A stretch of DNA of 64,000 nucleotides from Octopus sinensis (lineage: Eukaryota). This document shows positions 39,842 to 49,569 of this stretch, piece by piece (the stretch's first letter is position 1; each line of letters starts with the position of its first letter). Under the pieces are notes generated by a model. The model had not been told where the DNA came from and did no database searches. It saw only the letters and a program-made list of their open reading frames with translations. The stretch covers positions 1 to 64,000 of the forward strand of contig NW_021832383.1 of NCBI RefSeq assembly GCF_006345805.1. Reading direction: 5' to 3'. Position numbers and translations under genes: made by a program.

Positions 39842-40134
39842 TCACGAGGAAACGGGACCAAACTTAGCACTCAAGGCTTTCATCCTCCCCGTTTGTATGA
39901 AACTCCTCCATTTATCTTTCAGGTTAACGTTGCTCCGCTGTGTGCCCAAATAGTCTCGAATTTCAGCCCATTTACCAACTCCCATGAGCTTCACAGCCTC
40001 ATAGAACTCTTCTTCTTGTTCCTCTGTCCACAATTTTCGGTACATTTTGTCTCCGGATTTTTTCTTTGGCGATGGTCTGTATTTCAAACTTTTTCTCATT
40101 TTTAATGGTTGCAACTGTGGATATCTGTCGTTAA
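39842..40134 (-). CDS. TRF: TRF-like last exon with telobox Myb/SANT domain (KLWTEEQEEEFYEAVKLMGVGKWAEIRDYLGTQRSNVNLKDKWR)
   Basis: Telobox signature W-T-x-E...G-x-G-x-W...R-x2-V-x-LKDKWR; acceptor ttttattcacag phase 1; stop TGA at 39842-39844. Confidence 0.93.
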
Positions 40135-40293
40135 CTGTGAATAAAAAAATAACAAAAGACAATAAACTTTAGTAATACAGAATTGTCTGAGCATAAAACT
40201 GATCGTGAAATAGTATTTCATGGGTTGTCTAGAGCTTCAAATACAAAAGAAAACAATTTATCAAGATTTAACCGTTTAGCATTCAGATTACTT

Positions 40294-44518: not shown

Positions 44519-44734
44519 CTGAAAAAAAGAAATGAAGAAATTCTAAATTGTTTAAATGTGTTGACACGGGGACACACACACACACACACACACAGATATA
44601 GGTAGCCTTGTGAGTGGATTTGGTAGATGGAAACTAAAAGAAGCTCCATGTGATGAATTGTAGTGAAAAATATATAAAAACGCAAAATGTACAAAAATTT
44701 TATGTTGGACAAAATACATATATATATATATATA

Positions 44735-45264
44735 TATTTATATTATTTTGAGGGTACTACTATTCATAGACACCGCACGCTAAGAGGGACCAATGCGGTC
44801 AAAACTACTAAAATAAACAAAATTTTACCGAATGCAAAACTTCAAAGCAAGTCATTTAAAAAAAGAATTTAGTTACATATCACCTGTGATTTCGCAATTA
44901 ATGCAGAATATGCATTCTATGTTCATCAGTGCAACAAACTCAAGACATATAAGAAAAAACATAACGTTACAAACCCGATAGCCAACCGTAGAATTCGTCG
45001 TAGCATTGTACGAATGTTTATCTTTACATATCTATGAAAATGGCGGGCTTATTCGCAATGCATTTCGGTAACAAATTGCTTACTCGGAACAAAAATTCAG
45101 TATTGAACTATTCCGGTTAAAATATAAATTTACAATTGAGGATAAAATCTTTATAAGAAATTATCAGTAGTTAGCATGAAAAACCTTGTAAGAGGAAAAA
45201 ATCCGTAAATTTTTCCACTTTGAAAATATTTATTTATATTATATTGAGGGTACTACTATTCATA
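44735..45264 (-). mobile_element. 462-bp HHR-bearing insert flanked by 34-bp direct repeats
   Basis: TATTTATATTAT(T/A)TTGAGGGTACTACTATTCATA at 44735-44768 and 45231-45264. Confidence 0.7.
44865..44941 (-). ncRNA. Near-intact type I hammerhead in a TRF intron, sense strand
   Basis: GTTGCA-CTGATGA-ACA..AATGCA(TATTC)TGCATT..TGC-GAAA-TCAC(AG)GTGA-TA-TGTAAC; AUA site, predicted cut at 44878/44877; the main core defect is an A.C mismatch at 10.1-11.1. Confidence 0.8.
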
Positions 45265-45661
45265 TATAAAATAAAATACAAAATGGGACAAGAACGCAAA
45301 ACATCCGGACAATTATGTGATACAAGAGGGGACAACAAAACATCCAGGTAGACGATACAAAAAAACAAGGCCAAGTAATTTGAAGCCTTTTATCTTCAGT
45401 CAAGAACCAGATCATCCTCGCAATTTTGGCTGACCAATCTTGAGATTGCTCCAATCTGGCCAGCCCCAAGGAAAAACTAAGCTATGAGCATTAGATTCCT
45501 TGGAGAAAAGCATCGAATGTATACGAAACAAGGACAGAAAAACAGACGATGTTACACGAATATAAATACAAAAATAATACAAATAAAACAATAATAATAA
45601 TAATAACAGGACATAACAACAGGCATCTTTTGACTATATATATATACACATACATATATAT

Positions 45662-45962
45662 TCTTTTATTCTTTAACTTGTTTCAGTCATTTGGCTGCAG
45701 TCATGCTGGAACACTGCTTTGAAGGGTTTTAGTTGAACAAATCAGCCCCAGAACTTATTTTTGTAAGCTTAGTACTTATTCCATCAGTCTCTTTTGCTGA
45801 ACCACTAAGTTACAGAGACAAACACACCAACACCAGTTGTCAAGCAGTGATGGGGGACAAACACACACATACAGATACAGATATATATACATATATGACA
45901 GGCTTCTTTCAGTTTCTATCTACCAAATCCACTCACAAGGCTTTGGTTGGCCCAAGGTCATA
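45662..45962 (-). mobile_element. Family A SINE, 5'-truncated
   Basis: Sequence match to other copies. Confidence 0.75.
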
Positions 45963-46547: not shown

Positions 46548-46676
46548 CTTTTTCCAGATGTTTCGAAGTTTTTCTTTGTAATGTCTGTCGTCCTCGTCTT
46601 TTAGATACAACGAAGGTGACAAGGTGTCTTTATGCAACAGTTTTGATGCTATGGTTTGAGTAATTCTGGAGAAAGC
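46548..46676 (-). CDS. TRF: TRF-like exon 7 (AFSRITQTIASKLLHK...KEKLRNIWKK), linker region
   Basis: Acceptor gcttatttcag, donor AAG|GTAAAT, 129 nt, open only in phase 0. Confidence 0.65.
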
Positions 46677-46732
46677 CTGAAATAAGCAGACACAAGTTCA
46701 ACTGAAGTAATTAGAAGGAATGGAATTAATTT

Positions 46733-49407: not shown

Positions 49408-49569
49408 TAGGCGCAGGAGTGGCTGTGTGGTAAGTAGCTTACTTACGAACCACATGGTTCCGTGTTCAGTCCCACTGCATGGCACCTTGGGCAAGTGTCT
49501 TCTACTACAGCCTCGGGCCATCCAAAGCCTTGTGAGTGGATTTGATGATGGAAACTGCAAGAACCCATC

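What the first reader, a model, noticed from the sequence alone, without database searches (positions are those of the whole stretch)
44735..45264. Sense-strand, near-intact hammerhead inside a TRF intron, carried by an insert with 34-bp direct repeats
The HHR at 44865-44941 has a perfect CUGAUGA/GAAA core, 6+6-bp stem I, 5-bp stem III and an AUA site. The main defect is an A.C mismatch at the base of stem II, whose proximal part is short. It lies on the TRF pre-mRNA strand about 360 nt upstream of exon 8, so residual activity would cut the nascent transcript between the TRFH and Myb exons, a potential regulatory or attenuating device. The host insert (44769-45230) has unusually long flanking direct repeats, a terminal hairpin (ACCGCA/TGCGGT) and a possible second eroded HHR near 45058-45090, which is retrozyme/PLE-like.
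Basis: partly seen in the sequence, partly recalled or inferred. Interest (0 to 1): 0.85.

Follow-up and report, generated by a model that had tools for sequence, protein, structure and literature searches.

The report
Hammerhead-bearing retrozyme copy in intron
This stretch is one ordinary copy of a 496-base, non-coding jumping element that occurs several hundred times in this octopus-type genome. It carries a self-cutting "hammerhead" RNA motif and happens to sit in an intron of a telomere-factor-like gene, with no sign that it regulates that gene.

Summary
It is the only hit to a relaxed type I HHR descriptor in the window, and 42 Mb of composition-matched random sequence gave no hit.

The "insert with 34-bp direct repeats" is not a one-off. 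It is 1.07 units of a ~496-bp repeat present in hundreds of copies. Across 66 insertions:
- all touch (TA)n microsatellites;
- each has one of two fixed 3' ends and a variable 5' end;
- they are partial tandems, and half have a head-to-head inverted partner.

This is the layout typical of Penelope-like element (PLE) insertions, that is, an animal non-LTR "retrozyme".

The A.C mismatch at the base of stem II is not private decay. It marks the larger lineage (235 exact 16-mer matches against 34 for the G-C form). Changes fixed in lineages avoid HHR-breaking positions, whereas private mutations do not (p about 0.003), so the motif is selected in source copies.

The copy does lie, in sense, in an intron of a TRF-like Myb gene. 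I found no evidence of cleavage, RNA editing or gene regulation. The "second HHR" and "exon 8" were not confirmed.

Earlier notes of this scan describe 491- and 493-bp HHR arrays in (TA)n elsewhere in this genome. They may be the same family. Cleavage itself is untested.

The parts
44735..45230 (-). One full ~496-bp unit of a non-coding, AT-rich (31% GC) dispersed repeat family. The sense (RNA-template) strand is the minus strand.
   Evidence: The own-genome DNA search gives end-to-end matches at 92-100% identity on many chromosomes. Unit layout is, GC content. An identical copy lies on contig C11656.
45231..45264 (-). 34-bp partial second unit: a 5'-truncated upstream copy forming a partial tandem, in the size range of the 30-40-bp PLE 'tail'.
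   Evidence: Direct repeat 496 bp apart. In other copies this partial unit is 34 to 366 bp long. The PLE 'tail' and partial tandems are described in bioRxiv 10.1101/2021.04.23.441226.
44865..44941 (-). Type I hammerhead motif. Stem I 5' strand 44941-44930; CUGAUGA 44929-44923; stem II 44922-44894 (A10.1 at 44922, C11.1 at 44894); GAAA 44893-44890; stem III 44890-44879; A17 at 44878 (predicted cut 44878|44877); stem I 3' strand 44877-44865.
   Evidence: Direct reading. Descriptor scan and random control. The HHR fold is -13.9 kcal/mol against an MFE of -15.8, and the HHR fold is the MFE itself in a sister copy. Lineage-level changes avoid disruptive positions. No Rfam hammerhead hit.
44718..44734 (.). 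(TA)n microsatellite abutting the element's sense-3' end: the insertion target. A TATA remnant follows the other end at 45265-45268.
   Evidence: All 66 insertion blocks touch (TA)n, and 91 of 100 sense-3' ends abut it.
44771..44800 (-). 6-bp hairpin (ACCGCA/UGCGGU, 16-nt loop) about 35-65 nt from the element's 3' end. Role unknown.
   Evidence: The two lineage-level changes in its arms give G.U pairs.
39866..40129 (-). Last coding exon of the host gene: a C-terminal Myb/telobox domain of telomere-repeat-factor type.
   Evidence: ORF. Pfam PF00249, E 1.5e-10. tblastn with P0001 residues 427-516, E 7e-24. The Myb of the 516-aa homologue P0001 best matches Myb domains of plant TBP1, TRF2 and Terfa among solved structures.
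46548..46682 (-). Nearest homology-supported upstream coding exon of the same gene, so the insertion lies in an intron.
   Evidence: tblastn with P0001 residues 217-261, E 5e-4, colinear with exons at 63477-63358, 61751-61536, 59245-59129 and about 50900.

Best explanation
The stretch is a solo insertion (one unit plus 34 bp of a second) of a ~496-bp non-autonomous retroelement of the Penelope-like (PLE) type, i.e. an animal non-LTR "retrozyme". It inserted into a (TA)n microsatellite in an intron of a TRF-like Myb gene and happens to be in the sense orientation.

Shown here:
- family membership and copy number;
- the PLE-type insertion layout;
- the presence of a type I hammerhead on the template strand;
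- selection for that hammerhead in source copies.

Inferred life cycle, from what is known of retrozymes and PLEs:
- Source copies are transcribed as more-than-unit-length RNA.
- The hammerhead trims this to unit length. It may act as a dimer through its palindromic stem III.
- The RNA may be circularised by a host ligase.
- A PLE reverse transcriptase/endonuclease then copies it into nicked (TA)n DNA, priming at one of two A/U-rich sites of the RNA. This yields the partial tandems, the inverted 5'-truncated partners and the short tail.

The window's copy matches its lineage's hammerhead exactly. It has only one ribozyme and the A.C mismatch at 10.1/11.1, so at most it would nick the intron slowly. 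Any effect on the host gene is unshown and, in my judgement, unlikely.
For: - Family size: end-to-end matches at 92-100% identity on many chromosomes. An anchor 16-mer outside the HHR occurs 320 times, and the two 16-mers spanning the HHR core occur 235 and 34 times, with 0 for reversed controls.
- Layout: 66 distinct insertions all touch (TA)n, and 34 of 66 have a head-to-head partner. Sense-3' ends cluster at two sites (unit positions 1-8, n=52; 386-398, n=42), while the other end varies.
- This matches the published PLE hallmarks: partial tandems, an inverted 5'-truncated copy, a 30-40-bp tail and microsatellite bias.
- HHR not by chance: it is the only descriptor hit in the window, with none in 42 Mb of random sequence. 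My analytic estimate is roughly 1 chance hit per 1000 Mb per strand.
- HHR selected: of 12 variants shared by 3 or more copies, 10 are compatible with the fold or fall on the free core position N7 (U, A or C) or on 10.1. Of 63 private variants, 42 are disruptive, matching the 67% expected for random substitutions (Fisher p 0.002; 0.003-0.006 with stricter definitions).
- The HHR fold is the MFE in a sister copy and within 2 kcal/mol of it here.
- The genome has canonical type I HHRs with the same short, near-palindromic stem III.
- A natural retrozyme HHR with a mismatch at the base of helix II (axolotl HHR_Amex2, U.U) still cleaves, better as a dimer (PMC7229834).
Against: - No Rfam hammerhead model reports this motif or its sister copies, even at E up to 10.
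- Stem II is unusually long (29 nt), with an internal loop and, in most copies, an A.C mismatch where G-C is the rule. Catalysis is untested.
- (TA)n targeting is reported for Naiad PLEs, which occur in Octopus and lack hammerheads. The partner element might therefore not need a ribozyme.
- No autonomous partner was identified, and there is no sequence similarity to the genome's canonical HHR repeats.
- The public runs gave contigs only. Contigs cross the predicted cut site, and the single "goes back 493" joint fits a tandem copy as well as a circle.
- Overall density of lineage-level changes in the HHR is similar to the rest of the unit.
Confidence: 0.8

Rival explanations
1. The element is a non-autonomous PLE-type repeat, but the hammerhead-like motif is a non-functional look-alike or a dead relic. 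The family would be mobilised by hammerhead-less Naiad-type PLEs, and the motif plays no part.
For: - Naiads target (TA)n, lack HHRs and occur in Octopus species.
- Rfam models miss the motif.
- The A.C mismatch at 10.1/11.1 is carried by the most recently amplified lineage.
- The HHR region is not more conserved overall than the rest of the unit.
Against: - The chance rate of such a motif is very low.
- Lineage-level substitutions avoid core and pairing positions, while private mutations hit them at the random rate.
- The only core position that differs between lineages is the free position N7.
- The motif lies on the template strand.
Confidence: 0.13
2. One reading: this particular sense-strand intronic hammerhead has been co-opted to cut the nascent TRF-like pre-mRNA between the upstream exons and the Myb exon. 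It would act as an attenuator, perhaps switched on by A-to-I editing of A10.1.
For: - The intronic, sense position is confirmed.
- The motif has no private mutation in this copy.
- An intronic self-cleaving ribozyme that lowers host-gene output is known: the CPEB3 ribozyme (PMC10919898).
- Public contigs show T>C at 44922.
Against: - This is one of several hundred equivalent copies, and sense orientation is a 50% chance event.
- In Xenopus, 42-44% of retrozyme copies overlap introns, so an intronic copy is ordinary.
- The copy has about 1% private divergence spread over the unit, with nothing locus-specific.
- The T>C at 44922 and nearly all other contig differences are alleles of other genomic copies.
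- Contigs span the cut site.
- There is a single HHR with an A.C mismatch and no evident loop-loop contacts, so fast cleavage is doubtful.
Confidence: 0.04
3. The stretch is a DNA transposon or MITE bounded by the 41-nt inverted repeats at 44604-44644 and 45902-45942, or a simple local tandem duplication or satellite.
For: The inverted repeat is 41 nt long and 95% complementary. A 496-bp direct repeat is also present.
Against: - Other copies of the 496-bp unit have unrelated flanks, (TA)n plus unique DNA, and never these arms.
- The arms are pieces of a separate, extremely abundant repeat, with contig depth 10^5-10^6.
- Copies are dispersed on many chromosomes, with fixed 3' ends and variable 5' ends.
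Confidence: 0.02

Closest known systems
Animal non-LTR retrozymes (Cervera & de la Pena 2020, PMC7229834; Li et al. 2026 preprint, 10.64898/2026.07.22.740005)
   Same: - Small non-coding AT-rich unit with one type I hammerhead per unit.
- Tandem or partial-tandem copies dispersed in the genome.
- Link to PLE-type insertion features.
- A precedent for a mismatch at the base of helix II (axolotl HHR_Amex2).
   Different: - The unit (496 bp) is above the 170-400 nt RNAs first described, though within the 51-972 bp range of the 2026 preprint.
- Most copies here are 1-2.5 units rather than long arrays.
- Stem II is long (29 nt) with an internal loop and A.C at 10.1/11.1 in the main lineage.
- Rfam models do not detect the motif.
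- Linear and circular RNAs were not shown here.
Penelope-like elements and their pseudo-LTR hammerheads (Cervera & de la Pena 2014; Craig et al. 2021, 10.1101/2021.04.23.441226 / PMC8557442)
   Same: - Partial tandems, an inverted 5'-truncated partner and a 30-40-bp tail.
- Microsatellite insertion bias.
- A hammerhead with a short, near-palindromic stem III of the kind said to act as a dimer.
   Different: - There is no RT/GIY-YIG ORF, so the element is non-autonomous.
- The (TA)n preference is the one reported for Naiads, which lack hammerheads.
- The partner clade is unknown.
Intronic self-cleaving ribozymes of vertebrates (hammerheads HH9/HH10; CPEB3 HDV-like ribozyme, PMC10919898)
   Same: A self-cleaving-ribozyme motif on the sense strand of an intron of a protein-coding gene, probably retroelement-derived.
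   Different: Those are single-copy and conserved across species at one locus, and CPEB3 has measured effects on its host gene. This is an unremarkable member of a repeat family with several hundred copies, with no evidence of locus-specific conservation or effect.

Membership tests
Hammerhead ribozyme, type I | Conserved core: C3 U4 G5 A6 N7 G8 A9 and G12 A13 A14, A15.1-U16.1, and H17 that is not G | tested here: met
   CUGAUGA at 44929-44923, GAAA at 44893-44890, A15.1-U16.1, A17 at 44878.
Hammerhead ribozyme, type I | Three helices around the core, with stem I open (type I topology) | tested here: met
   Stem I 6+6 bp, stem III 5 bp (2-nt loop), stem II 2 bp proximal plus 6 bp distal. The HHR fold is within 2 kcal/mol of the MFE here and is the MFE in copy L078.
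Hammerhead ribozyme, type I | G10.1-C11.1 pair closing stem II | tested here: not met
   A10.1 (44922) opposite C11.1 (44894). This A is the allele of the larger lineage: 235 exact 16-mer matches against 34 for the G form.
Hammerhead ribozyme, type I | Match to the curated covariance model (Rfam RF00163 and clan CL00010) | tested here: not met
   No hammerhead hit at the gathering score or at E up to 10, for the window or for three sister copies. The same model finds 7 canonical HHRs elsewhere in the genome.
Hammerhead ribozyme, type I | Site-specific self-cleavage | not testable with these tools
   Only contigs of public runs were available, and they cannot show RNA ends.
Animal non-LTR retrozyme | Small non-coding AT-rich unit carrying a type I HHR, in tandem or partial-tandem genomic copies | tested here: met
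   496-bp unit, 31% GC, one HHR per unit. Blocks are 1.07 to about 3 units. Only short chance ORFs are present.
Animal non-LTR retrozyme | Expressed as unit-length linear and circular RNA | tested here: inconclusive
   Runs guessed to be RNA hold pieces of the unit. One contig joint goes back 493 nt, which fits a tandem copy or a circle. No raw reads were available.
Penelope-like element insertion (non-autonomous) | Fixed 3' end with variable 5' truncation, partial tandem (pseudo-LTR), inverted 5'-truncated partner, short tail, microsatellite target | tested here: met
   66 of 66 blocks touch (TA)n and 34 of 66 have a head-to-head partner. 3' ends lie at two sites and the other end varies from 34 to 366 bp. 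Features are as described.
Penelope-like element insertion (non-autonomous) | Sequence shared with the 3' end or pLTR of an autonomous PLE in the same genome | not tested
No similarity to the canonical HHR repeats L031-L037.

The most novel reading that the evidence does not exclude
The family's usual A10.1.C11.1 mismatch keeps the hammerhead nearly off. A-to-I editing of that A is plausible in a cephalopod, and the frequent head-to-head copies would form double-stranded RNA. Editing would create an I-C pair and switch the ribozyme on. The sense-strand intronic copy would then become an editing-gated cutter of the TRF-like pre-mRNA, and the family an editing-gated retrozyme.
Probability: 0.03. 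Interest if true: 0.75.

Novelty: new member of a known kind. Interest (0 to 1): 0.3.

Why it matters
It adds a cephalopod family to the animal retrozymes and non-autonomous PLEs. It also shows that a hammerhead with a long, looped stem II and an A.C at the base of that stem can stay under selection in source copies while escaping the standard covariance models. This is useful for people who annotate ribozymes and repeats in mollusc genomes, and for the open question of what hammerheads do for PLEs. For the host gene it matters little: the copy looks like an ordinary intronic repeat.

Tried and rejected
- **Rfam.** I searched at the gathering score on the whole window, and at E up to 10 on 1.2 kb around the motif and on three sister loci. 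There was no hammerhead hit on the family.
- **Canonical HHR repeats.** A sensitive blastn against the genome's canonical HHR repeats (L031-L037) found only low-complexity matches.
- **Public reads.** All listed runs were contigs, with kind only guessed as RNA. No ends, no strand and no clear circle could be read.
- **Editing.** The variants seen in contigs match alleles of other genomic copies, so the editing reading was dropped.
- **Second HHR at 45058-45090.** Rejected.
- **MITE reading from the 41-nt inverted repeat.** Rejected.
- **TRFH domain.** Pfam finds only the Myb domain in the 516-aa homologue, so "TRF" remains "TRF-like".
- **Polarity of A versus G at 10.1.** It cannot be settled without an outgroup.
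- **Earlier notes by sequence.** The search was blank.

Full report
**The motif.** Read on the minus strand, 44941-44865 is GAGUUUGUUGCA CUGAUGA [29 nt] GAAA UCACAGGUGAU A UGUAAC U AAAUUC.
- Stem I has 6+6 bp with one bulged U. Both conserved core blocks are present.
- Stem III has 5 bp with a 2-nt loop, or 4 bp with a CAGG loop. A17 is at 44878, so the predicted cut is 44878|44877.
- Stem II begins with A (44922) opposite C (44894). It continues with 2 Watson-Crick pairs, a 3x3 internal loop, 6 pairs and a 5-nt loop.
- A descriptor as loose as this motif requires found only this site on both strands of the window. The descriptor was CUGANGA, an 8-40-nt stem II with any 10.1/11.1 and at least 2 proximal pairs, GAAA, a stem III of at least 4 bp, H17 not G, and a stem I of at least 6 bp.
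- The same descriptor found nothing in 42 Mb of first-order Markov sequence with the window's composition. By multiplying component probabilities I estimate about one chance hit per 1000 Mb per strand.
- Rfam reports no hammerhead here at the gathering score or at E up to 10, nor in three sister copies. The long stem II probably accounts for this, although I did not test that. The same Rfam model finds seven canonical type I hammerheads elsewhere in this genome.
- Those canonical copies have a similar short, near-palindromic stem III (ACAUGUGU) but a compact stem II. They share no sequence with this unit.
- The hammerhead fold costs -13.9 kcal/mol against an MFE of -15.8 for this copy. It is the MFE itself in copy L078. 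The shuffle z-score is unremarkable, at -1.1.

**The "insert".** The 530 bp match end to end, direct repeats included, at 92-100% identity on many chromosomes of the 2.7-Gb assembly.
- One match is a 100% identical copy on contig C11656, probably the same locus assembled twice.
- A conserved 16-mer of the unit outside the hammerhead occurs 320 times, against 0 for the reversed control.
- The two direct repeats lie 496 bp apart. They are simply the start of the unit and the start of a second, truncated unit.
- In 66 distinct insertion blocks, every block touches (TA)n and 34 have a head-to-head inverted partner.
- The end that is 3' on the hammerhead strand falls at one of two A/T-rich sites: unit positions 1-8 (52 ends) or 386-398 (42 ends). 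Of 100 such ends, 91 abut (TA)n.
- The other end is variable, with a partial unit of 34 to 366 bp.
- The window's copy follows this pattern. (TA)n abuts its 3' end at 44718-44734, and a TATA remnant follows the other end.
- This is the insertion layout described for Penelope-like elements: 5' truncation, partial tandems forming pseudo-LTRs, an adjacent inverted 5'-truncated copy, a 30-40-bp tail and microsatellite bias (bioRxiv 10.1101/2021.04.23.441226).
- It also fits the recent view that animal retrozymes are non-autonomous PLE derivatives (10.64898/2026.07.22.740005).
- The hammerhead lies on the strand with the fixed 3' end, which is the template RNA strand.

**Is the hammerhead a property of the family?** I aligned 84 distinct copies of the motif.
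- Variants shared by three or more copies reflect changes in source elements. They fall on N7 (U, A or C in different lineages), on 10.1 (A or G), in the stem II internal loop, in loop III, or give U.G in stem I. Only 2 of 12 break a pair or a core base.
- Private variants reflect decay after insertion. Of 63, 42 are disruptive, the same as the 67% expected for random substitutions under this model.
- Fisher's one-sided p is 0.002, and 0.003-0.006 when "shared" means 3 to 6 or more different loci and gaps are left out.
- I read this as purifying selection on the hammerhead in the elements that made new copies.
- Caveats: the model was drawn from the window's copy, and the overall density of lineage-level changes in the motif is like that of the rest of the unit.

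**The A.C mismatch.** It is not a private defect of this copy.
- The 16-mer with A10.1 occurs 235 times and the one with G10.1 occurs 34 times.
- A tree of 44 near-full-length units separates a G10.1 clade from a ladder-like A10.1 lineage. The youngest, nearly identical copies of that lineage carry A.
- The window's copy sits at the base of the A10.1 ladder. It has 5 private changes in about 450 nt, none of them in the hammerhead.
- Which state is ancestral cannot be told without an outgroup.
- A natural retrozyme hammerhead with a mismatch at the base of helix II (axolotl HHR_Amex2, U.U) cleaves weakly alone and better as a dimer (PMC7229834). A mismatch there therefore does not by itself mean a dead ribozyme.
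- In the A10.1 ladder's younger copies stem III plus its loop is a perfect 12-nt palindrome (AUCACAUGUGAU). This suits dimer formation, though that is inference.

**Host gene.**
- The ORF at 39842-40162 (minus strand) ends in a Myb domain (Pfam PF00249, E 1.5e-10).
- The best library relative, P0001 (516 aa, 65% identical over this exon), also has a C-terminal Myb. That Myb best matches Myb domains of plant TBP1, TRF2 and Terfa among solved structures.
- tblastn of P0001 places colinear exons on the minus strand at 63477-63358, 61751-61536, 59245-59129, about 50900 and 46682-46548, with the Myb exon at 40129-39866.
- The insertion is therefore intronic and in the sense orientation, between the upstream exons and the Myb exon.
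- Pfam does not detect a TRFH domain in P0001, so I call the gene TRF-like.
- No homology-supported exon lies about 360 nt downstream of the motif. The ORFs there are repeat-derived.

**RNA evidence.**
- All runs offered were contigs whose RNA nature is a guess. Laid on 44600-45400, they hold short pieces of the unit. Several contigs cross the predicted cut site, and no end clusters were reported.
- One joint "goes back 493", which fits either a tandem copy or a circle.
- T>C at 44922, which would be G or I at 10.1 on the RNA strand, does occur in contigs. So do many other differences.
- Of the 31 contig differences I checked, 27 are alleles present in three or more of my 44 genomic copies. 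The G10.1 allele is in 12 of 44.
- There is therefore no evidence for editing or for cleavage, and none against low-level cleavage.

**Other claims.**
- The "second eroded hammerhead" at 45058-45090 reads CCGAGUA-type in all copies, with two invariant positions wrong and no stem I. It is, however, next to the best-conserved stretch of the unit (45052-45069).
- The ACCGCA/UGCGGU hairpin near the 3' end is kept through G.U-compatible changes. Its role is unknown.
- The 41-nt inverted repeat around the region (44604-44644 and 45902-45942) belongs to another, extremely abundant repeat. It does not accompany other copies.

**Verdict.** The stretch is a known kind of element, an animal retrozyme or non-autonomous PLE-type repeat, represented here by a family whose hammerhead is atypical. 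The atypical features are a long looped stem II, A.C at 10.1/11.1 in the main lineage, and invisibility to Rfam.
- Earlier notes of this scan describe 491- and 493-bp hammerhead arrays in (TA)n in the same genome. These may be the same or a sister family. I could not check that.
- In Xenopus, 42-44% of retrozyme copies overlap introns, so an intronic copy is ordinary.
- The proposed attenuation of the TRF-like transcript has a precedent in kind, the CPEB3 ribozyme (PMC10919898), but no support here.

Noticed in passing
window 44604-44644 (+) and 45902-45942 (-): Two inverted 41-nt pieces (95% complementary) of a separate, extremely abundant repeat. Contig depth there is 10^5-10^6 in all four runs, and the loose ends continue into a shared sequence. 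It is probably the tail of a very high-copy SINE. The same peptide-like signature recurs near 49500.
   Followed up: partly
window 45275-45365: Another high-copy repeat immediately beside the insertion, with contig depth 10^3-10^4 and many variant contigs. The intron here is a patchwork of repeats.
   Followed up: no
G000:C11656:17331-17860 (L001): A second contig carries a 100% identical copy of the 530 bp, with at least 50 bp of identical flank on each side. It is probably the same locus assembled twice (haplotig or duplicate contig).
   Followed up: partly
L036/L037 (G000:C16:25146363-25146839) and L031, L034, L035: Canonical Rfam-positive type I hammerheads (CUGAAGA core, GACCC/GGGUC stem II, ACAUGUGU stem III) in other repeats. 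These include a tandem pair 431 bp apart and an inverted pair in L034. They represent further retrozyme/PLE families in this genome.
   Followed up: partly
L072:545-636 (-): A weak, sub-threshold match to Rfam Hammerhead_HH9 (22.9 bits, E 0.048), outside the 496-bp family block of that locus.
   Followed up: no
window 45052-45069 (minus strand ACCGAAAUGCAUUGCGAA): The most conserved stretch of the unit among 31 full-length copies. Its function is unknown; it could be a signal for transcription or for the reverse transcriptase.
   Followed up: partly
window 63477-39866 (minus strand): Exon map of a TRF-like gene by homology to a 516-aa protein with a C-terminal telomeric-type Myb. Pfam does not detect a TRFH domain in that homologue.
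   Followed up: partly
Neither the Rfam gathering search of the window nor my type I descriptor flagged anything there.
   Followed up: no
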